Position numbers and translations under genes: made by a program
DNA from: Selaginella moellendorffii
Taxonomy: Eukaryota > Plantae > Lycopodiophyta
NCBI RefSeq assembly: GCF_000143415.4
Contig: NW_003314293.1
Location: forward strand, 1,322,431-1,386,430
Length of the DNA stretch: 64,000 nt
Direction of reading: 5' to 3'
Shown: piece after piece, positions 2,281 to 38,300 of the stretch
Layout: every line of letters begins with the position of its first letter
Position numbering within the stretch: the first letter of the stretch is position 1
The notes under the pieces: model-generated
Seen by the model: the letters and a program-made list of their open reading frames with translations, nothing else
What the model was told of the DNA's origin: nothing
Databases searched by the model: none

Positions 2281-4380
2281 ATGTTGGTCCATCTCCGTGG
2301 AAGAGATGGAGCGGGCGACTCGAGGTTCAGCTTCTCGGGCTTGTTTATTCCATTAATATTTGCGTTAACCAGGGCAGTGAGTATGACAGAGAACTATGGC
2401 ACGTAGCACATCTCCCTTATTGGCACTCAGGGATCCAGCTTTAGCTCATCCATGAACGCCCAGTGTGATTTGATAGTAAGAAGGAGCCACAGAGTTTTAA
2501 AGAAGGGACATGCATATGAATCGGACTTCTTCTAGTAGCAGTGTACACCAAGCAAAGCTTACTCTTATTCCATTTGGGTCTCTAGTCCTAGCATTGAGCA
2601 GAGTAGCAAATCGACACATACCTGTGGTTGCTTTCATTATAGTAGCTCGATGGCAAGGCGAGCCGCGAGATTCACATCTTTACGAGAGTATCCTGTTCAA
2701 AGAAGAAGGACAAGGAGATGAAGAAGAAAAACAAAGTCGCTCAGACTCTGGCCAGCGAGAATACCTCAAGTCTTCCTGGCAGAGGACATCGTTCCCCGTA
2801 GCGTTTTCATCCTGCCTGCAAAGCCGCCATCCTTGAGATTCCCGGCCAGCAGCTTCCTGCATTGAATCAAAAATGATCCAGCGAAAGAAAATGTTTGACG
2901 AATACCTGACGCTCTGCCAGCAGCTGGTCCTGCAAATCCTCCACCGGTATACAAATCCTCCCGGAACCGCGCCAGCGTGCGTGCGCAAGTCATGAAGAAG
3001 TTACTGCACAGACCACAAACTGTCCTGTGCGACTCGCTCGGACCGCTCGCCCTAGCATATCGTGTATCAAGGTCAAGCCGTGCTCGTTAGTATGCGTTAG
3101 CACAAGAAAAGAGAAGAACCGCTACTCGCTTGAGATGTGTATCCTTGTGCCTCATATCCACTTAGACGTGGACATCGTTGAGGGAATTGAGCTGGGGCAA
3201 AACTTCTGGCAGCAGATGACACGAGCAGGACATCGTAAGAGAAGCAAGCCGAGGGTTGAAGAATCGGAGGTGACGTTCGTGTCAGAGAAACCAGAGGCAT
3301 GAGGAGACTACATGATCAAACCATCAGAGCAAGTTCCCCCAAACTTCTCTAAATCAAATCACCTGAAAGGCGCAGCGGCCAGAGTTTGTGATCCGGCAAC
3401 ATGTGGCAGTGCTCCTCCTTGGCCAGGGGCAATGTACATTTGCCAACACCTGGAATCTTCATGAGCGAAGAAAATGGAAACGCGGTAGCCATCGATTTAC
3501 CATGACAGCGAGCCTGGATGAATCCCTGGAGGGACAAGTAGAGGCGCTGCTGCTGCTGGTAATTTCCAAAGCCTCCCGGACCGATCGCTTGCTGCTGCTC
3601 TCGCCGCCAGCACGATTACTGTTTTGCAGCTGCCCAATGCGAACATAACATCACATAACAAACTCGTTACAGCCATGAGAGCCCCATAGCTGAGAAGTGT
3701 AGAAGCATCAATGAGGTTTGCGAGCATACATTCTTGCTTGGTGGCGTTGGATGGATTATATTTCCAAAATATTAAAAACATAAGGGTTAAAAGGGCTGAC
3801 CTAGATCATATTATTTGCACAAGATAGTATTGCCGATCAATTTCAGAACTGAACAAACAAAAGCGATAAGAAGTAGCATTCCAGACTGGCAACAAATCAA
3901 AAGGTGAGTACTCACTGTCTCTTTTTTGCATTTGCTACAAGATCATCATACAATGCAATGGAGCAGCATTAGTAACCTCAATTGACATGTTCCTTGATCA
4001 ATGACAACGTTGTATAATTGAAGAAGATAATGCAAAACCAGAAAAAAGTTTCACTTTGTTCATTGTGCCCATTGTGTTAGTGGCTCCTTTTATAGCAGCA
4101 GCAACAGAAAGGTATTGGCATACATTGCCTAGACAACAACACTGGGCTAGAAAAACTTCCTGCGAGTTCAATAGGAAAAAAGGAGCCAAAAGAAACATCC
4201 CTGGAGCTTTTGAATGTGCTGCCGCAATCTGATCAATTGCTGTCCCAAGATCGTCGTTGCGCTGAAACTCGATGCCTGAAAACAATTTTTCTGAGCACTG
4301 CCTTCTTCGCAATTTCTTGGGGAGCATCGACTTTCTTCTAAGCTTTTGGCTGGCGGACGTAATATGGGTTAGGGCTGGTG

Positions 4381-5388
4381 ATGGAGCATGTAGATATCCT
4401 TTTGAAGCTTCCTGGACCGAGTCTCTTGAGAGCGAGAGCTGTTTGCAAGGCTTGGAAAGAAGTAATTGATTCTCCATGGTTTTCAAACCGCTACAGGGAT
4501 CCATCGCCCTACATCTTACTGCCATCGTCAAAACAAGAGGGCTTGCCATTCTGTAACATATGCCACTTGGTTCTGGGTAAGTGGTTCAAGTTGGAATTTC
4601 CATCCACATATATCCAGTTGGTCTCTCAGTCCGGGCTGGTGCTGGTCCGGGAAGGCAGAGTTTTTTGGGTGGGGAACCCATTCTTCAATAAGTGGAAACG
4701 ATATAACTTAGACTTGCCATTTGCGAAATTTGATCATGAGCTTGCAACTCTAGCGGATCATGAGCAGGGCTACCGAGTAGTATTTCGGGTGCGTAGGTTT
4801 ATGCAAACAGCAGTCCTCTACTCTTGGAAGTCAGAGTGGCTCGTCACAGAGCAATGTAAGGAGGATATCAAAATGGAGGATTTTGCGGATTTTGTCACAT
4901 CCTCTTCTACTGTTTGTGGCAACATCATCCATTCCATTGGGTCCAAAAACAAAGTGGCACTACTAAGTTGTCGTGTAGACAATGGCAAGGTTCTCTCGCT
5001 CCGCTACTTGAAGCTGGGATCTGAAGTACTTGAAGGGCGTTTTAAGCTCTTTGGTTGGGATGGCAAGCTCTACTTGCTGGGAGAAAATGACAGTCACTTA
5101 TTTGGACTCTTTGAAATAAGAGGAGAGAATGTAGTTCTGATAAGCTGGGCGCCAGAAAGCATTTCTATAAAATTTCCCTTCGTAAGGTCGGCAAGCATAT
5201 ACAACAATATTATCTACTGCATTTTTCAAGTGAAGCTAGCAATGCTAGTAACTTACAACCTCAGTAAACATGGTTCGTGGCAGGTGGTACCACTTCCAGA
5301 ACCATTGCCTCTGTGCATTGGAATCTTAAATATTGTGAAGTTTAGTTTAGACTTACCGTTTGGGTTAGACTTGTGTAGTTCCTATTGA
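4381..5388 (+). CDS. F-box protein (F-box plus kelch/FBA-like C-terminus), single exon
   Basis: MEHVDILLKLPGPSLLRARAVCKAWKEVIDSPWF F-box motif; SQSGLVLV and VGNPFFNKWK motifs; VTYNLSKHGSWQVVPLP terminal motif. Confidence 0.8.
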   Translation: MEHVDILLKLPGPSLLRARAVCKAWKEVIDSPWFSNRYRDPSPYILLPSSKQEGLPFCNICHLVLGKWFKLEFPSTYIQLVSQSGLVLVREGRVFWVGNPFFNKWKRYNLDLPFAKFDHELATLADHEQGYRVVFRVRRFMQTAVLYSWKSEWLVTEQCKEDIKMEDFADFVTSSSTVCGNIIHSIGSKNKVALLSCRVDNGKVLSLRYLKLGSEVLEGRFKLFGWDGKLYLLGENDSHLFGLFEIRGENVVLISWAPESISIKFPFVRSASIYNNIIYCIFQVKLAMLVTYNLSKHGSWQVVPLPEPLPLCIGILNIVKFSLDLPFGLDLCSSY

Positions 5389-6339
5389 TTTTCTTTTTCA
5401 CTTAGTTGATTTTGCTCTTGACCCTCCACACCTGAAAGGTTGTTATGAAAAAAAATCATAAAAATTTTCGAAATAATTTTCTGTCCAGCAGCTTTTTGGA
5501 TTGGGAAATTTTAGTTCCCACTATAAATCTCATCCAGGCCGAGCATTCAGCAGAGAATAAGCCAGCCGAAGGAATAATTTTGCAAAACCTTTACTCCTAG
5601 AATGTTAGAAACACAGTGTTAGGACAAGGAAAATAATGCGAACGATAACATGGATCATGGTCAATCTCCCTTGCCAGAGGCTTGGAAGCTTTCACGAGCA
5701 CTTGACCAGTGAAAGCTTCCAATGCTCTTCAGCAAGAAAAAATGTCTTTTGAGTTTGTCAAAGTTTTGGTACAGCTACCATTTAGATCTCTGATAGATGG
5801 TAATCAACAAAGAGTGGCTCAATCACGTCAAAGGCTAAAGAGGGCTGGGGAAAGCAGGCAGCCTTGCTTTACCCCAATGGCGTTGGTGATCGATTTTTGA
5901 CTGATAAAGTCGGCAAGGATAACGTTATATAATGCCTAGATTATATCTGGGGTGTCCCATGTGCCTTCTGCCAATCCCATAAGCTTTGTCTTGGGACTGT
6001 ATCCGAAGCTTTCTTGAAGTTTACGATATCTACTTGTGTATGGTGCATAACATGATTAAGTGATCTGCACAATTGTATTATCGCCAGAAACCCGTCACAC
6101 ATTTCGCTTTTAAGGCATATCAATTGACAATTAAGATTTCTCTGTTTAGAAGAGCATCAATGGAACAATCAAAATAAAGATCTGTTGCCCTTCTTTTCAG
6201 GAGCCATGCTCGCAATTCAAGAGAGAAGACAAAAAGCGCAAAGGCAAGAATCAAGAAATGAACTCAACATGATGAAGCTTAACTTTATAGAGTGACTTGT
6301 GATCTTATCATATGAGAGTTCTTGCTTTCCGGGTCGGGC

Positions 6340-7060
6340 TGTGTCCAGGAGTTCTCGTGGATGCCCTGATGGATCTGTTGGAGGTGATCAAGCTCTCGTG
6401 GGAGATGGTCAATCCTCTGAAAGCCAGGCCAGTTTCGAGGAGGCCTGCTGCTGCTCATGGCAACAAGGACTACGACTACTACGGTTGTTGACAAAATGGC
6501 TCTCAAGTGTGTTACGAAAAGGCTCTGCAAAGATTGGAAATGGGTTTGTCTCCCTAGCGTTCGAGCGCGAATCGCCCACGTCCGCCCGCACAACAAATCT
6601 CGTGTCCAACTTCTGAGCAAGACTACCATCTTTCAGGTGTAGATTGATCTCTTGAGCACTTTATTCAAGCAAAGAAATAAAGCTCTAAATCGATCGGAAC
6701 GAGGTCGGAGATTCGCTGTTCGTGATAGAATGCCAAGCGTATGCATTCTCTAGACAAAGCGATTGGCTGTGTCGATCTCACAAACGAGATCGTGGTGAGA
6801 TCCAGAACGAGATCACCAGCCGGATCTGGGAGGAGGTGGCTGGTTTACAGCCTGCGGCCACAAGGATGCTTGAGCTGCACCACAATCACTGTCTTGTTGT
6901 CTTCGACACTCATGGCTTGCATGCTATCACAAAAGAAGGCAAGTTGCATGGCCTGCCAACTACCCGCCAGTCGTGGATGCTGGGACAAATGCTCTCAACG
7001 CACTCCCGCGGCACACCATCTGATGCCAGCACCAGAAACTTACAGCCCCCATCATGATGG
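6340..7060 (+). pseudogene. Possible degraded F-box/kelch-type gene remnant
   Basis: Disrupted frames with 'MVNPLK..', 'WKWVCLPS', 'IWEEVAGLQP' and 'TRQSW' resemble F-box C-terminal repeats. No continuous ORF. Confidence 0.2.
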
Positions 7061-7783
7061 AAATCAATTTCCACAACGTCGGGAAGAGCCACTACCGCGG
7101 GATTTTTCAACTGAATTCTTATTTCCCTTCCCTTCCTGAATGAAATAATCCAAGAACCCAAACGAGTACAAGGGGCTTAGTAAAATAGCGAGAGATACGG
7201 AAATAGGAGTGGAGCGTAGCGTGGTTATGAGCGTCTGTGGCATAACACCACTTTTAAGTTGTGATTCACTGGTTGAATAGTTTACAGCCCTGATCATACT
7301 GGCTGAGCACACATCTGACAGTTGAAATCCGCAGATATGATCCGACAAAACGTGTTGCTGTTTGAAACTGCGAACTTCTCCTGTATTGCGTGGTCAATTT
7401 CTTGGTGCTTCAATCGTCCTTGCTTGGATCTAACCCTCAATGAACTCTTTATTGTTCCAATAGTGCTACTGCGTCACCATGGATCTGGGATCGAACATTG
7501 TTGTGCAACACAACCCAAAAGTTGCTGGACGGCGTTGAAAGGCCTGGGCAAATGGCAAAAACGTGGGAATTATACTTATGGGCTGGCTATGGAAGACAGT
7601 GGCCGACTTTCGATGTACTGATGACGCCAGCAGCCGGACGGAGAAGCACAGCTTGAATTAGTTGTTTGTCTGGAATGTCTGGCTTCTTTCCGACATCAAA
7701 ACATTTATAATGCAAGGTGGCGGGCTTTAAGTTAATGAAGTTGGTTAACAATGTAAGAAGAGTAAAATAAAACGAACTCTCTT

Positions 7784-10462
7784 TCACCCAAGAAACTTGG
7801 CAAGCTCCATTCTTACCTCATTCGCAGCGTCCGCCATCACCTTGCCATTGTTTATGGTCGTAGTCGTCCACTGGATATTGTCCTCGCTCTTCAAGAATCG
7901 CCCTCCTCTCGGGTACTGCACTTGCTGCCACCCCATCGCGCTCCATTTGTCACACTGCTCCTCGATCCTCCTCCTCTTGAACCGAAAGTGCGCCGCGATC
8001 AAATCCTTGAACACCTCGTCCGGACTGCGCAGCGCCGGCACCATGGAATGCATCATCGTGTTGAAGCACTGCTCGTAGTTGTAGTTCTCGGACTCGTAGT
8101 GGCGGCTACCATCCTTGGGCCTGCTCTTCTCCCACCCGGGTTCGTTGTAGTAAGGCTCGCTCACGAACACCAGGCTTTGGAGCGACACGAGCAGCTGGAG
8201 CAGCGTCGAGGATCCCGGCTGCCACGATGGCCCGGTCCAAGTCCCCAGCAAGCTCAAGCACACCTTGCCACAGTGGTACAAGTTTGGGTTGAATCGCACC
8301 TTGCCGCCGGCGGTGGTCAGGAACTGGACCGACGGAGGGGAGCTCGGGTAGCCATCGCCCACGAAGATGTCGAAGAGGAAGATCCCATTCTCGTATGGCG
8401 TGTCGTGGGGGCCGATGATGAGCGCGCGGAGGAGGTCCATCCGGAACTCGTCCACCCGGACGTGGATCGAGGAGTGGAACTCGAGCGGGAGCTGCGTGGC
8501 GAGGCCAGCCAGCTCCTTGGCGATGCGCCGGGACCGGCTGCCGTTGCCCAAGTCCGCGTCCCAGTGGATCGAGCTCCGGAAGTAGTGATTCTGGAGGAGC
8601 GCAGCGTGGCCGAACTGGAGTGGCTTGAGCGCCGTCACGTAGTCGAGCTCCTCGCTGCTTGGTTCGTCCATGGCGATCACTTGCTTGCCTTTGTCGTCGT
8701 GTCGCGGCGGTGGAGAGCTCTCCTTCTCGATCGTGATGCTGCTAGCGCCGGAGGAGGGCGACCCTGACGGAAGAGCACCAGGGTGGCGGAGCTTGAAAAC
8801 TTGGTCCGAGTCTTCCATCCACGCTGCATGCCACGCGAGGCGCTGCCTCCACGCACTGATCCGCCGCACCAGCCGCTCAAACGTGTCCTTTGCCTCGCCA
8901 AACAGCGCCGCCTCCACCGCGGAGTTCTCGTCGTCGTCCACCCCGCCAAGCATCGGCGTGCTCAGGAAGAACGAGGCCTGCGTGTGGAGCTTCGCGAAGC
9001 TGGCCATGAGCGACGCCGGATGGAACAGTCCCTCGCTGCCGCTCCAGCAATCGTGGCTCGGATCCGACGCGCTGCCGCAAACCAGCGGGAGGAGCTCCGG
9101 AAGGCCGGCAACAGTCCGCAGCAGAGCAAAGAGCTCGAAGTGGAGCTCCGAGCGGGAGACGATGTCCAGCGCTGAATCGTTGCGGAGCAGCCAGCTGAGA
9201 ACATCGCGGGCGATAGAGTCACGGCAGCACAGCAGCGCGGCTGCTGGCAGCGAGACCCGGCCGCCATTCTCCAGGCACGCCAGCTTGATCCCGTCAGAGA
9301 GCTTCCTCAACACCTCGACCACTGCCTTGTCCGAGGCCTCGACATTCTTATCCACGGCCACTGCGCAAACCTCCTTGGAGCTCGCCGTCTCGGACTTCTT
9401 CGCCTTGAAAGCTCGCCGGATCGACGAGCTCTTCTTCGTGTAGTTCTTCCTCGCCACCTTGACGCTCAAGCTCGAGTGATACACTGCCCGGAGCTCCTCC
9501 ACCGTCGCAAAGATGGTCTCCATCTCCGCGTCCCACGAAAAGGTCGCCGCCGCCGCCGCCACCTTGAGCCGCTTCGCCGAATTCTCACCGGGGTTGAAAG
9601 CCGCCGAGGCGTCGCGCATCCTCGAGCACAGCCACTGGTCCACAAAGTCCACGGCCTTCTTGCCGGCGACAACTCTTAGATCCTGTCGGCTCAGGGGGAG
9701 CTGGCAGATCGGACACTCGAATCCCGCAAACCCGGACTGGAGCCTCTCCACACGGTCGCCGACGAGCCCGACCGCGCAATCCCGGCAAAAACCGTGCCCA
9801 CATCCTTGGAGGGAGTAGCCGTCAACGCCGTCAACGCGGCACACCACGCAGTTGACCGGGGGCTTGACCGCTGGAGGAGCCGGGTCCTCCTCGATCATCG
9901 TCAAATCGATCGGATCAAACGGGGCTCGGCACATAGAACACGCGCTGGAGGGCATCTCATTGATGAAAGTGCAAGCCGGGCAAGCTCTCTCGCTCGATCC
10001 CGATGATCCTTCTTCGCTGTTCTTGGGCTCGTTGTTGCGAATCTCCTGCTCGATCCGCGGCTCAAACCGGGCATTGCACATAGAACACGCCAGCGCTCCC
10101 ATCTTGTTGGCGAAAGTGCAAACTGGGCATGGCTTCGATCCGGCGGCGCCGCTCGAGGCCCCAAACTCCGATCGACACATGCTACACTTGGCGGCCCTGG
10201 AGAAATTGAGATACGTGCAAACCTCGCAAAGCTTGGAGCGGGCCTCCTTGCCCGATTCATCGTCACTGCCATCGATCACCACAACGTTATCCTGCGGAGG
10301 AGGAGGATGGGGAGGAGGAGCACCATAGCCAGGCCCAGGAGCTACAAATTCTACTTCATCTCCTCCACTGTCGTCCTCTTCCTCGTCTTCCTCGTCTTCC
10401 TCTTCTTCCTCTTCTCCTTGACTGTAGTAGCCATCCCCCGTCTCGCCCCAGTCCACCTCCAT
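7784..10462 (-). CDS. 892-aa single-exon protein: acidic N-terminus, three NZF/RanBP2 zinc fingers, RING-HC finger, BIRC6/BRUCE-type UBC (E2) domain
   Basis: NZFs: CEVCTYLN..CSMC, CPVCTFAN..CSMC, CPACTFIN..CSMC. RING: CVVC..CGHGFCRDC..CPIC. BIRC6-like pre-UBC block: LLRNDSALDIV. UBC: RIAKELAGLATQLP..GPHDTPYENG..RFNPNLYHCGKVCLSLLGTW..EPYYNEPG, with catalytic Cys at 8258-8260. Confidence 0.9.
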   Translation of the reverse strand: MEVDWGETGDGYYSQGEEEEEEDEEDEEEDDSGGDEVEFVAPGPGYGAPPPHPPPPQDNVVVIDGSDDESGKEARSKLCEVCTYLNFSRAAKCSMCRSEFGASSGAAGSKPCPVCTFANKMGALACSMCNARFEPRIEQEIRNNEPKNSEEGSSGSSERACPACTFINEMPSSACSMCRAPFDPIDLTMIEEDPAPPAVKPPVNCVVCRVDGVDGYSLQGCGHGFCRDCAVGLVGDRVERLQSGFAGFECPICQLPLSRQDLRVVAGKKAVDFVDQWLCSRMRDASAAFNPGENSAKRLKVAAAAATFSWDAEMETIFATVEELRAVYHSSLSVKVARKNYTKKSSSIRRAFKAKKSETASSKEVCAVAVDKNVEASDKAVVEVLRKLSDGIKLACLENGGRVSLPAAALLCCRDSIARDVLSWLLRNDSALDIVSRSELHFELFALLRTVAGLPELLPLVCGSASDPSHDCWSGSEGLFHPASLMASFAKLHTQASFFLSTPMLGGVDDDENSAVEAALFGEAKDTFERLVRRISAWRQRLAWHAAWMEDSDQVFKLRHPGALPSGSPSSGASSITIEKESSPPPRHDDKGKQVIAMDEPSSEELDYVTALKPLQFGHAALLQNHYFRSSIHWDADLGNGSRSRRIAKELAGLATQLPLEFHSSIHVRVDEFRMDLLRALIIGPHDTPYENGIFLFDIFVGDGYPSSPPSVQFLTTAGGKVRFNPNLYHCGKVCLSLLGTWTGPSWQPGSSTLLQLLVSLQSLVFVSEPYYNEPGWEKSRPKDGSRHYESENYNYEQCFNTMMHSMVPALRSPDEVFKDLIAAHFRFKRRRIEEQCDKWSAMGWQQVQYPRGGRFLKSEDNIQWTTTTINNGKVMADAANEVRMELAKFLG

Positions 10463-10900
10463 GCCCGGAAAAAGCTTTGCCCTCGCCGGCGAGCGAATAT
10501 TCTCCCTATCAAACCCTAGGCCTAGGGGAATATACCGGTCAATTTATCTATTTTAGGGCTGACATCAGCGATAGGATGCTGACCTTTGGTTGCTCGGGTT
10601 TTATTTTTTTGTTTGCTTTTTCCGCTTTCGCGCGTTTCCTGGATTTGAAAAAGCTCTGTTCTTGGTCGCGGATGATTAGGGCGAAGCGATGAGAGGGCGA
10701 GCTGTGATCGTCGGGAGATGGGTAGCAGCGGCGAGAGCCCGTGCCAGTTTATCGTCGAGCTCCTGAGCGAGAATGCGTACGATCTCATCTCCTGATCTAG
10801 AGAGGTTTTCACAGTTTCTCTTCCTTTTGCTCGTTTTCTCTAAATCAGTCCCAGTGACCGCGATCATCGTCCCCCGCCCCCGCCTCTGCCATCGAATCTA
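10463..10900. promoter_or_regulatory. Compact divergent (bidirectional) promoter region with telo-box-like motif
   Basis: 438 bp between head-to-head ATGs (10462 minus, 10901 plus). aaaccctag at 10511 overlaps a perfect 14-bp palindrome ccctaggcctaggg (10514-10527). Confidence 0.45.
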
Positions 10901-11840
10901 ATGCTAGCGGCTTTCAATCCTGCTGCGCAAGCAGCAGCTCAAGCTCCGCCACCGCCTCCGCCGCCGCCATCGCCGCCCACCCTCACCGCCACACTGCTCT
11001 ACAGCCGCGTGAGCAAGAACATCCTGTGCATGGAGGCCGGCAAGGAGCTCGTGGACCTGGTGGTGGGCTTCCTCACGCTGCCGCTGGGATGCGTCGTCAA
11101 GCTCCTCCAGGCGATCGAGATCCCGCCACCCGAGGGAGCGCCGCCGCCGCCGATCTCCAGCAAGCGCGAGGTGAAGCCGCTGGTGGGGATCACGAGCCTG
11201 TTCTCGTGCACCGAGAAGCTGGACGAATCGAGGATGTGCTCCAGCAAGAGCTTGCTGGTGGATCCTCGCCCAACCATGACCTTTGGAGACAAAGTGATCC
11301 GGATCCCCGGGACCGAGGGAGCGGCGATCTACTGCTGCGGCGCCCCGGCGGCGTGTGAGTTCATCACCAAGAAACCGGATCTAAAGTGTCCCAAGCACAA
11401 GAAGGTGATGGAGAACCCGTGCAAAGTCTTGGCGAGCGAGGAGGATGTGATCGCCGCCGCCGCTGCCGCCGCTGGGGGTGGCAAGAAGGAGGAAGCGGCT
11501 CCAAAGAAAGGGAAGAAAGGCGGGGCCCCGGCAGTGGAGGCTGCGCCGCCTCCCGGGTATATCAAAGCCGGATCGAGTTTCATGATCACCAACACGCTCG
11601 AGGTTTTCCCGAGCTCCACCATCCAATCCATCTTGCGACTGGGGACGCAAAAGGGCGAGAAGATGAGCGATCTGGAGAGCATGGAGATTCCAGTGTCGGG
11701 CGAGGAGGTAAGCTTTGATCTTTGGTTTCATGCTGATGATCGCTGGATCGATTTGTCACAGATTGTCCAGATGCTAAAATCGTCGCTTTCTTCCACCAAT
11801 GTGCTCAACGATGTGTTTGGCAAGCATTGCAAGAAACGTA
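10901..11840 (+). CDS. DUF674 family protein
   Basis: LLYSRVSKNILCMEAGKELVDLVVGFLTLPLGCVVKLL, GYIK..FMITNTLEVFPSSTI and LKSSLSSTNVLNDVF are DUF674 motifs. In-frame 54-nt intron 11708-11761. 3' end uncertain because of a second donor near 11838. Confidence 0.8.
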
Positions 11841-12335
11841 AGCGCGAGAAATCTCTCCACCACATTCTTGTTCTTGATGTTCTTCCTCTCGTTTCTTGTG
11901 ATCCCAGCGCTAGCTTCACCGATGATGCTTCTCCCGGCACCACCATCGGCCGGAGCTCTCCCCGCGTAGAGATCAAACGCAGGAAGAAAAGGAGAGAGTG
12001 ATTTAGAGCGTGGATTGGATGATCTTCCGGGAAGAACACAATGTTTGAGATTTATGGCCTAGTGAGGAAGAAAGGCGTTTTAAAAGCTTGCATGGACTGC
12101 CACGTAGCAAACCTCGCCATGGCCATGGGCATGAATGGGCATGGCCATGCATAGTGCCATTCAACGAGAGGGCGGGAAAAAAATCGCTAGGGGAGGCGTT
12201 GTTCCAATTACAATAAATTTGGTTTCCACAAAATAGCGAAGATGGTTCTTTAGGTTTTGTGGCGCTGCCCTAATTCGTCCGGTCTGGAGCTCGAGCGCGG
12301 CGCCGTGGCAAGGTAGAGCGATTTCTCTCGCAATC

Positions 12336-30728: not shown

Positions 30729-32399
30729 GGCCTCCAGCTAAAGCTCTTTCAAAGTCTCCACCAAAACGACAGTAAAGCTAGTCCCACCCTCGAATCGACT
30801 TGTAGCAGCACAGCTTTTCTCCTTCCCGGCCCTCCACCAAAGCAAAAGCTCGATTTCTACGCACCCTTCCTTCCTGTTCACGCCGTAAGCTCCAAGCTTT
30901 CCTGGATCCCTTCCCCGCGGCTAGTTTGTCCGCGAGCTACTGTCCTACCACTGTTCTTCCCCTTTGCTCCAAATCCAAAGCTCCCCCCTGGATGTGTTCT
31001 AGCGCTCTAGCTGCAAACACGCACACACCGGGATGAAGCGAATCATCGAGAAAGGTGGCACCGATAAAAACCAGCCAGCCAACCAGCCACCCCCGTCAAT
31101 CAATCAATCAATCCGGCCCCCACGGAGCTCCGGAAAAAGTCAACTTACAAGAACCACCGCCGCCTCCTCTTCGTCTTCTTCCTTGCAGCTCCAGCTCCAC
31201 AAGATGGACCGCGCAAAAAAAATCCCCCTCTTCTTCTCGCTCTCCTAGTCAAACACAAGCACCTCTATTCCTCTTTCTCCTCCAACCAAGAACACGAAGA
31301 AAAAAAAAAACCTCTCCCCCACATAGACGCTGAGAAAGAAAGCCCAAGCGCAGGCAGCAAGAAAGAAGAGAGACTTACCCGTGTAGCGTTTTGGAGCATT
31401 CCCTGGGATCCAATGGAGGCGGCCGAGCAAATGGGTCGGCGCTAAACCTTGCGAGGCGCGGCGGCGAGCACAGCCCAGTTCCCCAATCGCTGGAATCGGC
31501 GAGAGCGGCGCCCCAAAAGCCTCCAAATCTTTGCTTGCCACCTTTTGCTAAACGAAACGAGCGAGGGGACTAGCGCACCACCCTCGACGCCATGGATGGT
31601 GGTGGTGGTGGACGCTTAAACTCACGCACACGCACACGGGGGCACACCACTTAATAGAAAGAAAGAGAAAGAAAGAAGAAACCCAACCCAACTCTCTCCT
31701 CTCTCTTTGAGTTGATGGCCTAACTCTCTAAGTAAGAGTGCGATGCACGACTTTCAACTCTAACACGAAAAAAAAAAGGGCAAACAATGGGAGAGAGAGA
31801 GCCCAAAAGGTAAGAAAAAAAAAAAGATTGAGAAAAAAAACGGCAAAAAGAAGAACAATGAGGGTTAAAATGTATAAACCGACTTGGGTGGTGGAAATTA
31901 TTTCCCCCCAGCGGTCCAATCCATGGTGGCTTAAGGTGAGATTAAAGGCTAATCACAATTAGCCGCGGGGGGCTATGACTGCTATGTGCCACCGCCATCC
32001 TTCGGGAAAAAAAATAGGATTTGTGCTAACCGAGGTGGGGTTTATTAGCATTAGCGGGTGATTAGCGCCGCAGGCGTCAGATTGCTCGGCAGCAACGGTG
32101 AGGATTGGAGGGCGCCGGCGCTTTACAGGTATACGTGTACGCTGCATGGACCAGGAAGCAAAAGCAAAAAATAATGCTTGCCTCTCTTTTATATGTTTCA
32201 AGCTTTGTTGTGTTTTTTTAGGGGCCACCACCTTTGGGTTTGTAATGAGGGAAAATTTTGACAAGGACATGGAGTTTGTGGGTCGGCCTGCCGCAGCTGC
32301 CTCGTCTAGCAATAAAGTGGAGAAAGGTGGTGCAATTGCCACCGTTACTTTTAGTGCTTACCTGTCCCGTTATGCTGGATTTTGATTTTGGTCAATGAT

Positions 32400-35300
32400 T
32401 AGGTACTTTAAGATTTTTAACCATATTTATGTACTAAATTGTTTCTGAAGAAATTTCAAATGACACTAATCATCAAGTAGACTTTAAAAGTAAATTCTAC
32501 AGCCAAAACAAATATGCCAAAAATTAAATATGAAGAATTAGACAAATGGTTTTCCAAATTAATTTTATCTCATCACATATATGTGATAACTTAAGCAGAA
32601 TTTGATTTCAAAAAATAAGAACTCTTTAAAAAAAACTTAAATTAATATAAAAAATTAGAGAAAATTAAAACTAATTTTCTGTATAATATATTGCATATCT
32701 GCTTTCCAAAACACAAGTAATTATAATCTATTAGACATGATAGTAGCAATAAAGTTTTTTATAGAATAAGTAGAATAAAAATAAAATAATTTCATCAATA
32801 CTAGTATACTAAATCAAGTTTTTGTTATTATTTTATTAAATTTAGTTTTATTTATCTTTGTTCTTTTATATATTAACCCTTTAAATAAAAATTTACATTT
32901 TAAAATTATTAATGTAAGAAGCTATGAGATAAAATACATATTAAAAATAAGGAATTAAAATAAATAATGTCAAAGGGAGAAAGAAGAAATATAAATTTAT
33001 AATTATTATAAAAACTATTTTAAGCTTATGATAATGATAGAGGCTGTCAAGCATAATAATTAACATTTGATTTGGTGTATCTCATAAAAAATTTGGATTT
33101 CATTTAAATTTTAAAGCACTATTTTATATAAACAAATATTTCACTATAAAGTTTATTTTATGGAAAAGTAAACATGCATATCAACTATAGAATATTGACT
33201 AAAGCTAACATTAGAAATAAAAAAATTTATTCTCAAATAACAAGTCCATAATAGCTTAAAAAAACTTTCTTTTGAAAAAAATCATGTGGAAGTTTTGGTG
33301 GATAATGGGTGGTTAACATAATTAGTTAAAGAGGGAAGATAATGGCATGACAATGTTTATAAATTTAAAATTTTATTAAAATATTTACATAGCAAAAGAA
33401 TGTTTTCTGTGGCTCTGACATGTTTTTCTAATTGAAATTTTCATACACAACAAGAATCTTTTTTGGTGCTAGCTAGTCTAATTTATAATTGAGTTTAACT
33501 ATTATGCTCATAATTATAGGATTATAGCAAATATAAATAACGTGGTAATATGTATGCTAACATAAAGTGCATAAATATTGATTAGTAAGTTTATGCTTTT
33601 TGCCATAAGCACTAGATAACAAATGAACTACAAACACTAGGAAAAGAGCAAATGCAAAATAATGAAAACATATGTAAATAAAGTAAAACTCTTTTAAAGT
33701 GTTAAACTTAAGATTGAGTTGCAACATTGAGAGCAACATATTCTATATGTTATATGGGTTGTAATCGACAAAGAGAGAAAGCAAGTGTTACATTATTTAA
33801 AAATTAAATACAAGGAAATCTAAATTGGCAACTTTATATAATAAATTTAATGAAGTAAGATGGGTCAAGAAGAGTCATTATAGTGAAGCAAAATATAGAT
33901 TGCTTAAACTAATGTTGGGCCTAGACAAGTTTATATCACTTGAGAAGTAATTGAACTTTCTTCTTTTCATTATTACTTTCCATTATCTCTAACTAGGTTT
34001 TCATTCAAATATTTGATAATTAAGGTTTAGCAATGGTCTTCTTGAAGCATATAAATAAGCAATATCAAAGTCTTTAAATTTGTAAAGGTTCATAATGTAT
34101 TTTCCCTCTTTTTGTTTATATCAGATAAAAAAGAAGATCAAATTTCTTGATGTTAAGTGCTCTCTAGAAAGGATGGTGAAAAAAAAAAAAAGCTTAAAGT
34201 GTTCAAAGTGTTTATTGTTTTCTCCTACTTTACAACCCTTTTGAATATAACAAACATTGAGCCTTGAAAGTTTGTTTACTTGTAAGTGTTAATTTAATTT
34301 TTGATTACAACTTTTAGTGTTTTACAAATTCACTAATTTAACAAGAGTTAATAGTTGTATGGAAGGTGGTTTTACTTGCTGAGGGTATATTGAATGCATA
34401 GTGATGGATCTATTAGACACACTCTAACCACATATGGCATGGACAAGCTTATTATTCCATCTTAGTATGCTCATCAACTTAGCTTGTTTATTATGGCATA
34501 AATAACTATATCATTCCATTTTTAAAGATTATTCAACAAAAGTATTAAGAAAAATGGAATTTAACATGTACATACTCTTCCTCAAAGAAGTAGAGTATAT
34601 AGATTGTAAAACATATTACATTATTGAGATTATCGTAACAATAACTTAGTATAATAAAATGTATTGAGAGACAAAGATTAATTATAGAGTAGATATGTTT
34701 TGGCATGTTTTTTTGCCTTTGATAAACTGATGAGTTGAATCTATTTTTGCTCAAAGAATTTTAGAGATAGCATTGATTAGCATTTGTTAAGTAGTTTCTA
34801 GTTTATAATAATAAGGAGAAACTGCTGAACTTTGTGGATCTTGCTAATTGATGTTATCAAATAAAGGTAATCTCAGTTTTTCACTATACATTATTTTGAA
34901 TTTTGTTTGCAATATTGAGTCACCCAATAGGTGCACGATATATATTAGGTTAGGGAAGAAGGTAAGCATAACACTTATTTTTTTCCTCACTCAAAGAAGC
35001 CTTGTGAAAATAAAACTTTCTTTACTATAACATGTTTCTATTCTATTTAAATCTTATTTTAAAATCCAATTTTCTTCTTAAAATAATAAGTCTATTTTTC
35101 ACATATTTATTTAAACTTTGTAAGTTTTCTAATTTCTCTTTTTTATATCGATTTTTTATTTATTTATGAATACTCTTCAATCCCAATATAAAGCATAGAA
35201 GAAAATGCTATGTTTTGAAAATTTCAAAGGGGAAAAGCTATTATAAGCTCTTAAGACACATCAAAAAGGGATTAAGCCAACTTAAAAAATAGACAAAAAA

Positions 35301-38300
35301 TTTAATTTCAAAGAAGAAAGTTTGCACACTTCATCTTGTTACTCCTTTTCAAATAAAGGAAAATGTGAAAATTTCTTAAAGAGAGTTATTCCTTCGGTAG
35401 AAAAATATATAAGTCCAAGAAAGAAAAGTTAATAGTTAGCATATCAACACCTTAGCTCCAAAGTAAATGTATAATATAATATAGTCTAAAGATTTCTAAA
35501 TTTAATTCAAATTTACAGTTTTATCTTATAATCACTCTTTAGCATTTTTATGATGCCTCAAGATATGGGGGAACACCATCTTTAGTATCCCTTCTTTGAT
35601 ACCCATTAAGTCCCTTTCTATTCACAACAATGTTTGTCAAATTTATTATTGAGAAAGGGCTCAAAAACTTATCTATTAAATCCCATTAATTTTTCAAACT
35701 GTAGCTAAAGTAAAGTTCTAATAAACCATGCAAAATATCCAATAATACTATTCACATTTGGATTAAGAACATTGACCATTTAATCTTCTAGATAAATTAG
35801 AGCTAACTATTGAACATTTCACTAAATCATTAAACTTCTCCATTCATGTTCACTCTAACCTTAAATTCTTTAGTATTTACATTATCACCCACTATATGGA
35901 AATAACATTTTTTAATCATATTAATTCTTTGGAATCTTCCCCCTATTATCCCATAAGGACTTACTAAACCCCTTAAGGTTTGGAAGCAAATTGCTTTGGG
36001 CTTTCACCCCACTCTATAATATGTTTATCTTTAAATATATCAAACTTTGGACTTGGTCTTAAATATGGTCTCAAACTTGGTCTTAAATTCAATCTTGGAC
36101 TTAGTTTTAAACTTGATTTTAGACTTAATTTTGAACTCGATCTTAGAGTTGTTTTAGACTTGGTCTTAAACTCTATTTCAACACGTCCATGTACCACATA
36201 TTAGTTATTTTTTTGTCCCTTTTTAAAAACTTGCTTATTAATTGTTTTGTGCCCATTCTTTAAACACTTCTTTCAGAGTTCCACTCCCACTCTCGACTTT
36301 TTAAGTTAGAGCTTTTAGTCTAAATATATTATGCTTATTAAACTTTTACTTTAGCCACTGCCACATTATTCACCTTCGACTCTACTTTGAGATTTAAAGA
36401 TTTGTGTTTTATAATTTTTTAATGACTAATCTAGCTTGATATCTAAGTAGTTTTTCCCCTTTCTAAGCCTTTAGTACTACACCATAGTTGCTACCCTCTT
36501 CTTTATAGCTATGCTATACACGAGTCATATATCAAATAATATTTTAGAGCTAAAAACATGTAAGCAAGATATTAGAGCTAAAATTCTCACTTTATCTAAT
36601 TTTGTATTTTCAATAGCCATATAGGATAGAGAGAAGCTAGTGCCATATAAGGTTGAGATATTTACCATGTAAGAGTGAAATATTAAATTTATAAAGGTTT
36701 AAATAAAAGCATTTCTCACCCAAGTCCCCAAGTTTTTAATTCAAACCCACCCCCCCACCCCCTAAATTATATCCATATGATAAATGCAAAATTATGAGAT
36801 AATGTTTTGAGTAAGTTTTATGACATTTTAGGCTATAATAGATTTGAGTGTCATTTAAGTGTTCATCACTATTTTCAATCGTAAATCTAGCCATTTGGAG
36901 GAAAAGGAACTCATCTCATTGCTTTATTTCATCTATATTCTTGAATTTAGAAAGGAGCTTAATAAAACTATATAAGTAAATTATTTTTTCAGTTCAACTA
37001 TCTATTAAGTTACATGTCATTATAGGGTCAAAATATCTCAAAAGTGGCTAAGAAAAGTAAAGAAGTTAGAAAGAACATATTAAATCTTAAGATATGCTAT
37101 TGTTTTCAAAAGAAAAACATTTTTTTCCTTATATTTTTTACATTTTATCACAAAATTTATCATTCAACCAATTATAAAGCTCAATTAACACAATATACAT
37201 ATACAAAGTATATTGCATACCACTTTTTTGTATGTTAAAAAAATAATTAAAAAACCGTTAAGATTATTTGTGGGGGCATAAATCACTTGACTTGGACCAA
37301 TGTTGTAAATTAGTATTAGAATTTGTTTAACAAATCCAAAATCATAAGCATTTTTGAAGTGATTTTTGTTGCGAAAGAAACACATGAGAAACAAAAAAAA
37401 TTAAAAGTAACAAAAAGGGCTATAAGGAAAAAGGGAAAAAATAACAATAAATAAAAAAGAAAGAAGCAATAACTACCAAGAAAAAAGAGAGAAAAGAAGT
37501 AGTAGTCGAAAAAGATGAAGAAATAAAGAAGAAGAAATTAGAAGTTTTGGAAAAAAAAGATAAGGAAAAGGAAATAATAAAAAAAACTAATTTGTTGCAT
37601 ATTGTATGCAACAACACTTGATTTACTTAATAATAGTGTTTTTCTTGTTTAGTATTATTTATTAATATAATTGATCAATCAAAAATTTATAATTTATAAA
37701 TACAAGATTATTTTTTTTGCACACCATTATATGGTAGAATAAACTAGAATATACTAGAAAGTGTTTAGGAAATTTTAAAATTTATAAACATGTTTATAAA
37801 TTATAAATATAATATTAATCTAAATGAATAACAATTTTTAAATAATAAAATATCCCAGAATATCTAGATATATTTTTTATGTATCTATCAGCTCCCTCTC
37901 TTGGATAAAAAATTTTTAGATGTTAAAGGTTTTCTAGTCTCCTTGCATTTTTTCTTGCTAGGGTTTGCCCAACACCCAGCACCTATAGCTTATTATGAAG
38001 AGTGGAGAAGGTTGGAGATGGCTCCTCCATGCTAGATATGCTCTTCTTGGCAAAAAAGAATAAGAATTATCACTTAAGCTAAGAGTTTACTTTGTGTTTG
38101 TGGCTATTGTAGGGAGAGTGTTGGCACTGCTTTCATCAGCCTCAGGGTTTATAGTGAATTCTCATGTCACAAATTGGCATTTACAAATCTTTTTTCTGCC
38201 ATGTTCATCGAGTGTAATATGTGTGATCCAGGTGAGAAAGAGAGACTAAGGCATTTCTTTTTTCTCGTATCTATCCCAGAGCAAGTTACTAAGGCATTCA

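What the first reader, a model, noticed from the sequence alone, without database searches (positions are those of the whole stretch)
7784..10462. Candidate all-in-one ubiquitin/SUMO-reading E2-E3 enzyme: NZF x3 + SIM-like motifs + RING + BIRC6-type UBC
Seen: one intronless ORF joins three C4 fingers (~9925-10230), a RING-HC-like finger (~9700-9850) and an E2 domain with intact catalytic Cys. All three C4 fingers carry the T-F/Y plus hydrophobic (CSMC) signature. Hydrophobic-acidic motifs VVVIDGSDDE, PIDLTMIEED and QVIAMDE are interspersed. Known: the TF/hydrophobic signature marks ubiquitin-binding NZFs (Npl4, TAB2, HOIL-1L). V/I-rich cores next to acidic tracts are typical SUMO-interacting motifs. 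The LRNDS.LD block and LP....SIHVRVDE.R.D...LI.GP..TPY.NG match BIRC6/BRUCE rather than the UBE2O/PHO2-type E2s of angiosperms. Inference: a single polypeptide that binds Ub/SUMO-modified substrates and extends chains with its own RING and E2, like a self-contained STUbL/E4. The NZF-RING juxtaposition recalls LUBAC subunits. I know of no described protein with this architecture. The lack of introns among intron-rich neighbours hints at retroposition or another unusual origin.
Basis: partly seen in the sequence, partly recalled or inferred. Interest (0 to 1): 0.85.

Follow-up and report, generated by a model that had tools for sequence, protein, structure and literature searches.

The report
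Mini-BIRC6 enzyme with ubiquitin-reading fingers
This spikemoss gene is real, expressed and intron-free, and it joins three ubiquitin-binding-type zinc fingers and an RBR-type RING finger to the catalytic tail of the giant enzyme BIRC6; it belongs to an old, unstudied family found in red algae, green algae, mosses and ferns but not seen in flowering plants.

Summary
Window 7784-10462 (minus strand) is one 892-aa ORF. It is Selaginella moellendorffii LOC9655898, which RefSeq calls "uncharacterized protein".

- **Expression:** contigs from four studies cover the ORF end to end, without joints and without the flanks.
- **Domains:** a conserved SIM-like motif, three NZF-type fingers, a C3HC4 RING, a helical scaffold and an extended UBC domain with Cys735.
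- **BIRC6 kinship:** the UBC is BIRC6-type. It separates from the angiosperm UBC23-26 group, whose UBC is UBE2O-like, with 100/100 support. The scaffold alone also matches only the last armadillo repeats of BIRC6 (E 1e-17).
- **RING type:** the RING belongs to a family RING whose fold is that of RBR RING1 (Z up to 10.1).
- **Not unique:** NZF + RING + UBC also occurs in ferns, Chlorokybus and Mesostigma. RING + UBC occurs in moss, liverwort and a red alga. I found no paper on the family.
- **Not a recent retrocopy:** the fern orthologue is also intronless.
- **Most likely function:** a BIRC6-like E2/E3 hybrid that recruits ubiquitylated, and possibly SUMOylated, proteins. What the RING does is open.

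The scan had already found this gene on other DNA of the same genome (s1-408337, s1-421073). My independent tests agree with that follow-up.

The parts
7784..10462 (-). Single-exon coding sequence of 892 aa plus stop. It is Selaginella moellendorffii LOC9655898, second haplotype.
   Evidence: ORF. It is 99.4% identical in DNA and differs at 7 residues from XP_024541500.1. pN/pS between the haplotypes is 0.26, P = 0.007.
7623..10505 (-). Transcribed span seen in public run contigs, with short UTRs and no splice joint.
   Evidence: records of 2781 nt (7744-10505) and 2764 nt (7704-10467) are colinear. There are no joints and no coverage in 6600-7520 or 10650-12100. An adapter sequence sits at 10505.
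10355..10420 (-). Acidic low-complexity tract (residues about 15-36), predicted disordered.
   Evidence: Translation. pLDDT is below 50 for residues 1-77. Read laying masked it as a repeat.
10256..10285 (-). SIM-like motif VVVIDGSDDE (residues 60-69): a hydrophobic core followed by a Ser/acidic run.
   Evidence: It passes the strict pattern. It aligns with IIDVSSSDDD and IIDLSSDDDE in ferns, VIQLSSDDEE in P0131, VIDLCSDAED in Chlorokybus and IVISDDEE in Mesostigma.
10175..10228 (-). NZF-type finger 1 (residues 79-96), with a TY motif and Met in the second CxxC.
   Evidence: The best PDB match is TRABID NZF1, E 0.0012.
10076..10129 (-). NZF-type finger 2 (residues 112-129), with a TF motif and Met in the second CxxC.
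   Evidence: The best PDB match is the YAF2 NZF, E 0.0016.
9929..9982 (-). NZF-type finger 3 (residues 161-178), with a TF motif and Met in the second CxxC.
   Evidence: PDB matches are the NZFs of HOIL-1L, HOIP, NPL4 and TAB2.
9884..9913 (-). Second hydrophobic-acidic motif PIDLTMIEED (residues 184-193). It is weak and not conserved.
   Evidence: Located. It fails the strict SIM pattern. Ferns have LELRNLMVED at this position.
9599..9850 (-). C3HC4 RING (205-253) plus the helices that follow it (259-288). This is an RBR-RING1-type module, and the IBR-like cluster found in relatives is missing here.
   Evidence: Pfam RING hits are below threshold. hhalign against the family RING profile gives 98.5%, E 3.6e-15. 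The family profile against the RING1 of an RBR-UBC protein gives 95.4%. A fern relative's module folds like RBR RING1, Z 8-10. pLDDT is about 90.
8783..9580 (-). Helical scaffold (residues 295-560). Residues from about 355 to 545 are homologous to the last armadillo repeats of BIRC6 and include LRNDSALD at 426-433.
   Evidence: A profile of this region without the UBC hits only BIRC6 4310-4503 in the PDB, E 1.2e-17. PMC10827748 places that BIRC6 region at the C-terminal end of its armadillo-repeat domain. Helices have pLDDT 90 or more.
8663..8782 (-). Disordered linker (residues 561-600), which includes QVIAMDE at 594-600.
   Evidence: pLDDT is below 50 for residues 565-588. Motif located. It is not conserved.
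7895..8662 (-). Extended BIRC6-type UBC domain (residues 601-856).
   Evidence: phmmer against BIRC6 gives 214 bits, E 3e-62, over residues 618-856. Foldseek against the BIRC6 UBC gives E 6e-20, TM 0.86, 303 columns, 39% identity. Tree.
8258..8260 (-). Catalytic Cys735 codon, in RFNPNLYHCGKVC.
   Evidence: N725, P726, N727, L728 and Y729 are invariant in both family alignments; C735 is invariant among 15 sequences and nearly invariant among 131.
7790..7873 (-). C-terminal helix (residues 864-891).
   Evidence: Secondary structure of the AF2 model, pLDDT 90 or more.

Best explanation
The ORF is a functional, expressed, single-exon gene of Selaginella moellendorffii. It encodes a BIRC6-type E2/E3 hybrid enzyme, a 'mini-BIRC6'.

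Shown: the C-terminal 540 residues are homologous to the last armadillo repeats plus the extended UBC domain of BIRC6, and the catalytic Cys735 and NPN motif are intact.

Inferred: E1 charges Cys735 with ubiquitin, and the enzyme passes it directly to proteins held by its own N-terminal half, as BIRC6 and UBE2O do. A plant UBA1 could be the E1, because Drosophila BIRC6 is charged by UBA1. The N-terminal half carries three NZF-type fingers with the ubiquitin-binding TF + hydrophobic signature and one conserved SIM-like motif. The preferred clients or acceptors would therefore be proteins already ubiquitylated, and perhaps SUMOylated, so the enzyme would extend or branch chains (E4-like).

The RING is an RBR-type RING1 that has lost its IBR partner and has no RING2. 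Its likeliest role is to dock an E2~ubiquitin, either its own UBC domain or another E2. That step is not shown.
For: - Gene reality: ORF; contigs from four studies bounded by the gene and colinear; pN/pS 0.26 between haplotypes; RefSeq model of identical length.
- Catalytic module: UQ_con at 76.9 bits; BIRC6 at 214 bits against UBE2O at 139 and UBE2Z at 128; Foldseek BIRC6 UBC TM 0.86; 100/100 split from the angiosperm UBC23-26 group, whose UBC is UBE2O-like, with a true BIR-containing BIRC6 inside the query's clade; scaffold profile hits only BIRC6 4310-4503, E 1.2e-17.
- Model quality: the AF2 model is confident for residues 200-560 and 600-892, pTM 0.75.
- NZFs: the pattern occurs three times. 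The best PDB hits are almost all ubiquitin-binding NZFs. The defining features are listed in PMC11372445.
- SIM-like motif: conserved across streptophytes.
- RING.
- E1: Drosophila BIRC6 is charged by UBA1 (PMC12999496).
Against: - There is no biochemical evidence for any step.
- The NZF fingers lack the structural Trp before the first Cys, score below Pfam's cut-off (20.5 against 27 bits) and fold with low confidence (pLDDT 45-73).
- The RING type of this protein is inferred through its relatives, not from a fold of its own RING searched alone.
- The RING-UBC complex prediction gave no answer.
- Ubiquitin binding, SUMO binding and E1 choice all rest on motifs and analogy.
Confidence: 0.6

Rival explanations
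1. RBR-like relay with a UBC domain in place of RING2. The RING1-type finger docks a separate, already charged E2~ubiquitin and hands ubiquitin to Cys735 (E2-to-E2 transthiolation). The BIRC6-type UBC then acts as the E3 active site rather than being charged by E1.
For: The family RING has an RBR-RING1 fold and most relatives keep an IBR-like Cys cluster, but none has a RING2. One relative, P0012, carries a complete RBR fused to the same type of UBC. Human BIRC6 refuses UBA1 (PMC12999496).
Against: Drosophila BIRC6 UBC is charged directly by UBA1, so direct charging is the simpler reading. No E2-to-E2 relay of this kind is known to me. Selaginella has lost the IBR-like part.
Confidence: 0.12
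2. SUMO-targeted ligase (STUbL-like). The conserved N-terminal SIM-like motif is the main client selector and the NZFs add avidity for mixed SUMO-ubiquitin chains.
For: The motif is a hydrophobic core followed by a Ser/acidic run. It is kept at the same N-terminal place from Mesostigma to ferns and Selaginella.
Against: There is only one strict motif, whereas known STUbLs use several SIMs (my own knowledge). The other two motifs are not conserved. This is motif-level evidence only. Such motifs are also common in acidic disordered regions.
Confidence: 0.2
3. The C4 fingers are RanBP2-type fingers that bind RNA or another protein rather than ubiquitin, so the E2 hybrid is aimed at non-ubiquitin clients.
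For: Many plant RanBP2 fingers bind RNA (PMC7154859). Finger 1 has N-F-x-R after the TY motif, and ZRANB2 and Nup153 appear among the weak PDB hits. The structural Trp is missing.
Against: All three fingers carry TF/TY plus Met, which is the ubiquitin-binding signature. The top PDB hits are ubiquitin-binding NZFs.
Confidence: 0.1
4. A decaying retrocopy or an annotation artefact without function.
For: The gene is intronless and lies among genes that have introns.
Against: The reading frame is intact over 892 codons. It is expressed in runs from several studies. pN/pS is 0.26. All Zn ligands and catalytic residues are kept. The fern orthologue is also intronless and intact.
Confidence: 0.02

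Closest known systems
BIRC6 / BRUCE / Apollon (animal giant E2/E3 hybrid)
   Same: It shares the extended UBC domain with an NPN motif (39-40% identity, TM 0.86) and about 190 residues of the last armadillo repeats before it. It is probably also a hybrid that needs no separate E3.
   Different: It has no BIR domain and is 892 aa instead of about 4,850. It lacks the WD40, jelly-roll, CBM32 and UBL inserts. It has NZF fingers and a RING1-type finger that BIRC6 lacks. It is not an IAP.
LUBAC subunits HOIL-1L (RBCK1) and HOIP (RNF31), and other RBR ligases (RNF216, RNF144A, ARIH)
   Same: NZF finger(s) are followed by an RBR-type RING1 with its helix. Relatives also have an IBR-like cluster. UniRef even labels the Adiantum homologue as RanBP-type and C3HC4-type zinc finger protein.
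   Different: There is no RING2 catalytic domain anywhere in the family except in P0012, and no IBR in Selaginella. A UBC domain occupies the C-terminus instead.
UBE2O and plant UBC23-26, including PHO2/UBC24
   Same: These are large E2s with an NPN-type UBC that act, or are thought to act, as E2/E3 hybrids.
   Different: They form a separate clade (100/100) and score lower (139-160 bits). They have different N-terminal domains and have neither the BIRC6-like scaffold, NZF nor RING.
Basidiomycete 'ubiquitin conjugating enzyme family proteins' of about 890 aa, and chlorophyte homologues (Trebouxia, Myrmecia, Nannochloris)
   Same: They share the same scaffold + UBC module (31-39% identity over 47-72% of the query) and sit in the same clade. 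Nannochloris also has RanBP2 fingers.
   Different: The fungal members show no RING or NZF in Pfam. None has been characterised.

Membership tests
UBC-fold E2 superfamily | UBC fold above the curated threshold | tested here: met
   PF00179 at 76.9 bits against a cut-off of 27. Foldseek matches E2 structures.
UBC-fold E2 superfamily | Catalytic Cys and the (H/N)PN motif upstream of it | tested here: met
   N725-P726-N727 and C735 are invariant among 15 relatives. Among 131, NPN stays invariant and C735 is nearly invariant.
BIRC6-type UBC clade (as opposed to UBE2O / UBC23-26 / UBE2Z) | UBC groups with BIR-containing BIRC6 rather than with the UBE2O-like group | tested here: met
   Tree split of 100/100. 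P0232 carries a BIR domain. Bit scores are 214 against 139 and 128.
BIRC6-type UBC clade | Armadillo-type helical region upstream of the UBC, homologous to BIRC6 around residues 4310-4500 | tested here: met
   A profile without the UBC hits only BIRC6, E 1.2e-17.
BIRC6/BRUCE proper (an IAP) | BIR domain | tested here: not met
   No BIR hit in Pfam at E up to 1.
BIRC6/BRUCE proper (an IAP) | Giant multidomain dimeric scaffold (WD40, jelly-roll, CBM32, UBL, 31 armadillo repeats) | tested here: not met
   The protein has 892 aa. Only the last repeats are present.
NZF (ubiquitin-binding subgroup of RanBP2 fingers; features as listed in PMC11372445) | [quoted passage not shown] | tested here: met
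   All three fingers fit.
NZF | Thr-Phe/Tyr motif plus a hydrophobic residue in the second CxxC | tested here: met
   TY, TF and TF, each with C-S-M-C. Definition taken.
NZF | Structural Trp before the first Cys | tested here: not met
   The residues are L, P and A in Selaginella. The Trp is present in the Chlorokybus and Mesostigma fingers of the same family.
NZF | Ubiquitin binding | not testable with these tools
   No ubiquitin sequence could be handed to the complex tool. Pfam Zn_ribbon_RanBP gives only 20.5 bits against a cut-off of 27.
RBR E3 ligases | RING1 of the RBR type (fold with the following helix) | tested here: met
   A fern relative's module gives Z 10.1 to RNF144A, 9.6 to RNF216 and 8.2-8.7 to HOIL-1 and HOIP. 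Canonical RINGs give Z 5.9 or less. The query matches the family RING profile at 98.5%. The query's own RING was not folded and searched alone.
RBR E3 ligases | IBR domain | tested here: not met
   There is no Cys cluster after the RING in the query. Relatives have an invariant C-x2-C...C-x2-C-x4-C-x2-C-G cluster, with a less regular His/Cys site after it, whose identity as an IBR is inconclusive.
RBR E3 ligases | RING2 with a catalytic Cys | tested here: not met
   It is absent in the query and in all relatives except P0012.
STUbL (SUMO-targeted ubiquitin ligases) | Several SIMs that bind poly-SUMO, plus an active RING | tested here: inconclusive
   There is one strict, conserved SIM-like motif and two weak ones. 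SUMO binding and RING activity cannot be tested here.
UBE2O / PHO2 (UBC24) family | UBE2O-type UBC and UBE2O N-terminal domains (PF23043, PF23044, PF23046) | tested here: not met
   It falls in a separate clade. Those Pfam families do not appear in the query, although they are present in Nymphaea UBC24.

The most novel reading that the evidence does not exclude
The family is a previously unrecognised class of ubiquitin enzyme in which a BIRC6-type UBC domain has taken the place of RING2 in an RBR ligase. The RING1(-IBR) part docks a charged E2, or the protein's own charged UBC in cis or across a dimer. NZF and SIM readers position a ubiquitin or SUMO already on the substrate as acceptor. The result would be a self-contained, chain-type-specific E4 that is conserved across Archaeplastida and lost in angiosperms.
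Probability: 0.15. Interest if true: 0.85.

Novelty: new variant of a known kind. Interest (0 to 1): 0.6.

Why it matters
E2/E3 hybrids such as BIRC6 and UBE2O are few, and they have been studied almost only in animals. This family shows that the catalytic tail of BIRC6 (last armadillo repeats plus UBC) is an ancient, portable module. In red algae, green algae, bryophytes, lycophytes and ferns it is combined with the front half of a LUBAC-like RBR ligase (NZF + RING1).

It was probably overlooked because no flowering-plant member turned up, so model plants such as Arabidopsis would lack it. A protein of about 900 aa is also far easier to handle than the 530-kDa BIRC6. It could therefore help answer how BIRC6-type UBC domains choose substrates and E1s, and whether a RING1 can work with a UBC domain in one chain.

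Tried and rejected
- **RING-UBC complex prediction** (residues 196-300 against 600-892): no answer, score 0.00. This is evidence neither for nor against binding.
- **Family RING + second Cys cluster profile against PDB sequences**: not decisive. TRIM2 RING + B-box scored E 3e-5 and HOIL-1 scored 0.007-0.07. Sequence alone cannot tell IBR from B-box.
- **Foldseek on that module**: no hit at E 0.001 or better, although the list was dominated by RBR ligases. Only the VIA re-alignment gave a clear RING1 result, and only for model residues 1-108. The second cluster stayed unresolved.
- **Word-index search with the N-terminal 55-300 residues**: only P0001 was found. The cluster holding the Selaginella protein itself is represented by a 295-aa fragment outside the length filter, so this blank means little.
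- **ESM Atlas feature search of residues 55-360**: no usable hit.
- **Look-up of the Sphagnum gene for intron structure**: not on record.
- **Literature searches for the family**: nothing found. Subscription journals are not covered, so this does not prove absence.
- **Antisense ORFs** of 158-281 aa on the plus strand (7922-8767, 8670-9443, 9852-10328): no Pfam family. I take them for by-products of the 63% G+C coding region.
- **Recent-retrocopy idea:** rejected, because the fern orthologue is also one exon.
- **Pseudogene idea:** rejected.

Full report

Yes. The minus strand carries one ORF from ATG 10462 to stop 7784, 892 aa long. It lies in a 63% G+C island.

A pattern scan finds three fingers at residues 79-96, 112-129 and 161-178. 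All fit C-x2-C-T-[FY]-x-N-x6-C-S-M-C. It also finds a C3HC4 RING at 205-253 and the motif RFNPNLY..GKVC ending in Cys735. Pfam gives UQ_con at 76.9 bits against a cut-off of 27. The RING and RanBP-finger hits are below threshold.

**2. Whose gene is it, and is it expressed as one piece?**

The window is 98.8% identical to Selaginella moellendorffii scaffold GL377610.1 over the gene and its upstream neighbours. The protein differs at 7 of 892 residues from RefSeq XP_024541500.1, "uncharacterized protein LOC9655898". Its last 295 residues are identical to a model on a second scaffold. The window is therefore the other haplotype of the same locus. An older, truncated model was named "UBC25, E2-like".

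Between the haplotypes there are 9 synonymous and 8 non-synonymous base changes. That gives pN/pS 0.26, P = 0.007, which indicates purifying selection.

Twenty public runs from ten studies hold the stretch, at a share that matches the ORF and not the flanks. I laid four runs from four studies. Their contigs cover 7623/7704-10505 colinearly and include single records of 2781 and 2764 nt. There are no joints, no indels and nothing over 6600-7520 or 10650-12100. The runs are only guessed to be RNA. Gene-bounded coverage in 20-37 Mb assemblies is nevertheless what transcriptomes give. So this is one unspliced transcript and not two genes.

The plus-strand ORFs that overlap the gene have no Pfam family.

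**3. The C-terminal half is the tail of BIRC6.**

Against PDB sequences, the best match to residues 618-856 is the BIRC6 UBC domain (214 bits, E 3e-62). UBE2O scores 139 bits and UBE2Z 128.

The AlphaFold2 model was built from 131 aligned sequences. It has mean pLDDT 76.8 and pTM 0.75, and it is confident for residues 200-560 and 600-892. Foldseek matches it best to BIRC6 UBC structures (E 6e-20, TM 0.86, 303 columns, 39% identity), and only then to UBE2O and UBE2Z.

I built a maximum-likelihood tree of 43 UBC domains. It splits the angiosperm UBC23-26 group from everything else with 100/100 support. That group's UBC is UBE2O-like by PDB score. The query's side holds a 5,163-aa protein with a BIR domain, which is a true BIRC6. 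It also holds other giant proteins with ZZ/discoidin or SPRY domains, basidiomycete proteins of about 890 aa, chlorophytes and streptophytes.

The kinship reaches beyond the UBC. A profile of the helical region alone (query residues 355-605, 27 sequences, UBC excluded) hits nothing in the PDB except BIRC6 residues 4310-4503, at E 1.2e-17. That part of BIRC6 is the C-terminal end of its armadillo-repeat domain, just before the flexible UBC (PMC10827748).

There is no BIR domain. The protein shares a module with BIRC6 but is not a BIRC6 orthologue.

**4. The N-terminal half resembles the front of an RBR/LUBAC-type ligase.**

*NZF fingers.* The finger region's PDB hits are individually weak, as is usual for 25-residue fingers (E 0.001-0.6). 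They are almost all ubiquitin-binding NZFs: TRABID NZF1, YAF2, HOIL-1L, HOIP, NPL4, TAB2 and RYBP.

[quoted passage not shown] The Selaginella fingers meet all of these except the Trp. Fingers of the same family in Chlorokybus and Mesostigma do have the Trp.

*RING.* On sequence alone the RING looks TRIM-like, and the family context changes that reading.
- Most relatives have a C-x4-C last ligand pair.
- They also have a conserved "LSR.DL" helix.
- A second Cys cluster follows, with invariant C-x2-C ... C-x2-C-x4-C-x2-C-G and a less regular His/Cys site after it.
- The family profile aligns with the RING1 of a relative that carries a Pfam-significant full RBR, at 95.4% probability.
- The query's RING aligns with the family profile at 98.5%, E 3.6e-15.
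- A folded fern module (pLDDT 80) matches RBR RING1 domains ahead of canonical RINGs. RNF144A gives Z 10.1, RNF216 9.6, ARIH2 8.9, HOIL-1L 8.7, HOIP 8.2-8.4 and parkin 7.6. Canonical RINGs give Z 5.9 or less.

Whether the second cluster is an IBR stays unresolved. Selaginella has lost it. It has also lost a W..GTG[FY]GG motif that bryophyte, gymnosperm and algal relatives keep.

*SIM-like motifs.* Only VVVIDGSDDE (residues 60-69) passes a strict pattern. It recurs at the equivalent N-terminal place in three fern proteins, one unplaced relative, Mesostigma and, more loosely, Chlorokybus. The other two motifs are not conserved.

**5. How widespread is the architecture?**

Among about 260 retrieved relatives, 7 besides the query have NZF + RING + UBC. 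These are Adiantum capillus-veneris, two Adiantum nelumboides proteins, a further fern-like protein of unnamed origin (P0003), Chlorokybus and Mesostigma (one cluster contributed two near-identical rows). Another 17 have RING + UBC, among them Sphagnum and the red alga Hildenbrandia. Four have NZF + UBC, including Nannochloris. The liverwort Riccia also carries the RING, in a variant that my pattern missed.

In the tree, Selaginella groups with ferns and two unplaced sequences (98/85). Taxus, Sphagnum and Riccia form a second starred clade. No angiosperm member appeared in either database search. The angiosperm hits were all of the UBC25/26 type, some with two UBC domains.

The architecture is therefore old and recurrent. 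In the sources I saw, the members carry no functional annotation, only names such as "hypothetical protein". I found no paper on it.

**6. Intron loss.**

The Selaginella gene is one exon, while its neighbours (DUF674, PUB62/63-like, peptidase A22B) have introns. The Adiantum orthologue is also a single exon of 1,083 codons. The Riccia gene has several introns in its 5' third.

The intron-free state is thus at least as old as the lycophyte-fern split, or it arose twice. It does not mark a recent retroposition.

**7. Mechanism.**

*Shown:* an intact, conserved, expressed BIRC6-type scaffold + UBC with its catalytic residues, three NZF-signature fingers, one conserved SIM-like motif, and an RBR-RING1-type finger without RING2.

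*Inferred, with about 0.6 confidence:*
- E1 charges Cys735. Drosophila BIRC6 works with UBA1, so UBA6 is not obligatory (PMC12999496).
- The enzyme modifies clients held by its own N-terminus, as BIRC6 and UBE2O do.
- The readers would make it prefer proteins already ubiquitylated or SUMOylated, so it would extend or branch chains.

*Open:* what the RING1 docks. The complex prediction of RING with UBC gave no answer.

*Rivals:* an RBR-like relay onto Cys735 (0.12); SUMO as the main signal (0.2, not exclusive of the main reading); RNA or other ligands for the fingers (0.1); a dead gene (0.02).

**8. Verdict.**

It is right on the domains, on the BIRC6 type and on the LUBAC likeness. It is wrong on uniqueness and on recent retroposition, and the self-contained RING + E2 mechanism is unproven.

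The scan had already met this gene on other pieces of the same genome (s1-408337, which has a follow-up, and s1-421073). My tests were run independently and agree with that follow-up. They add four things: the scaffold-only match to BIRC6, the UBC tree, the structural RING1 evidence and the intron comparison.

I rate it a new variant of a known kind (E2/E3 hybrids), with interest 0.6.

Noticed in passing
window 3093-7619, compared with L001 8806-11571: Downstream of the gene the two Selaginella haplotypes are only 85-89% identical, with many gaps. The gene itself is 99.4% identical and the upstream 8.7 kb is 98.8% identical. This is a sharply more divergent or rearranged intergenic block.
   Followed up: no
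window 10901-12001 (+): A DUF674 gene (Pfam E 6e-15) lies head-to-head with the E2 gene, about 440 bp between the start codons. It has essentially no contig coverage in the four runs that do cover the E2 gene.
   Followed up: partly
P0012 (595 aa, Logan contig, organism unknown): This protein has a complete RBR (RING1, IBR, IBR_1/RING2; Pfam-significant) fused directly to a BIRC6-type UBC, without the armadillo-like scaffold. It is a natural E3-E2 fusion of another layout.
   Followed up: partly
P0221, P0223 (3,250-3,720 aa) and P0226 (2,056 aa): These giant non-BIR proteins carry ZZ fingers plus discoidin (F5/8 type C) domains, or a SPRY domain, in front of a BIRC6-type UBC. This suggests that the BIRC6 tail has been attached to several different substrate-binding fronts.
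   Followed up: no
alignments A1 and A3, columns just before the scaffold: A W..GTG[FY]GG motif is conserved in bryophyte, gymnosperm, algal and many other relatives. It is absent from the Selaginella + fern clade. Its function is unknown.
   Followed up: no
P0008 (Cynara), P0280 (Nymphaea UBC24-like), P0279 (Aristolochia): These angiosperm large E2s carry two UBC domains in one protein. That is why they ranked high in whole-protein searches although they belong to the other clade.
   Followed up: partly
window 32001-38000: A 6-kb block of 27% G+C lies in an otherwise 43-63% G+C window. It is probably repeat or transposon-derived intergenic DNA.
   Followed up: no
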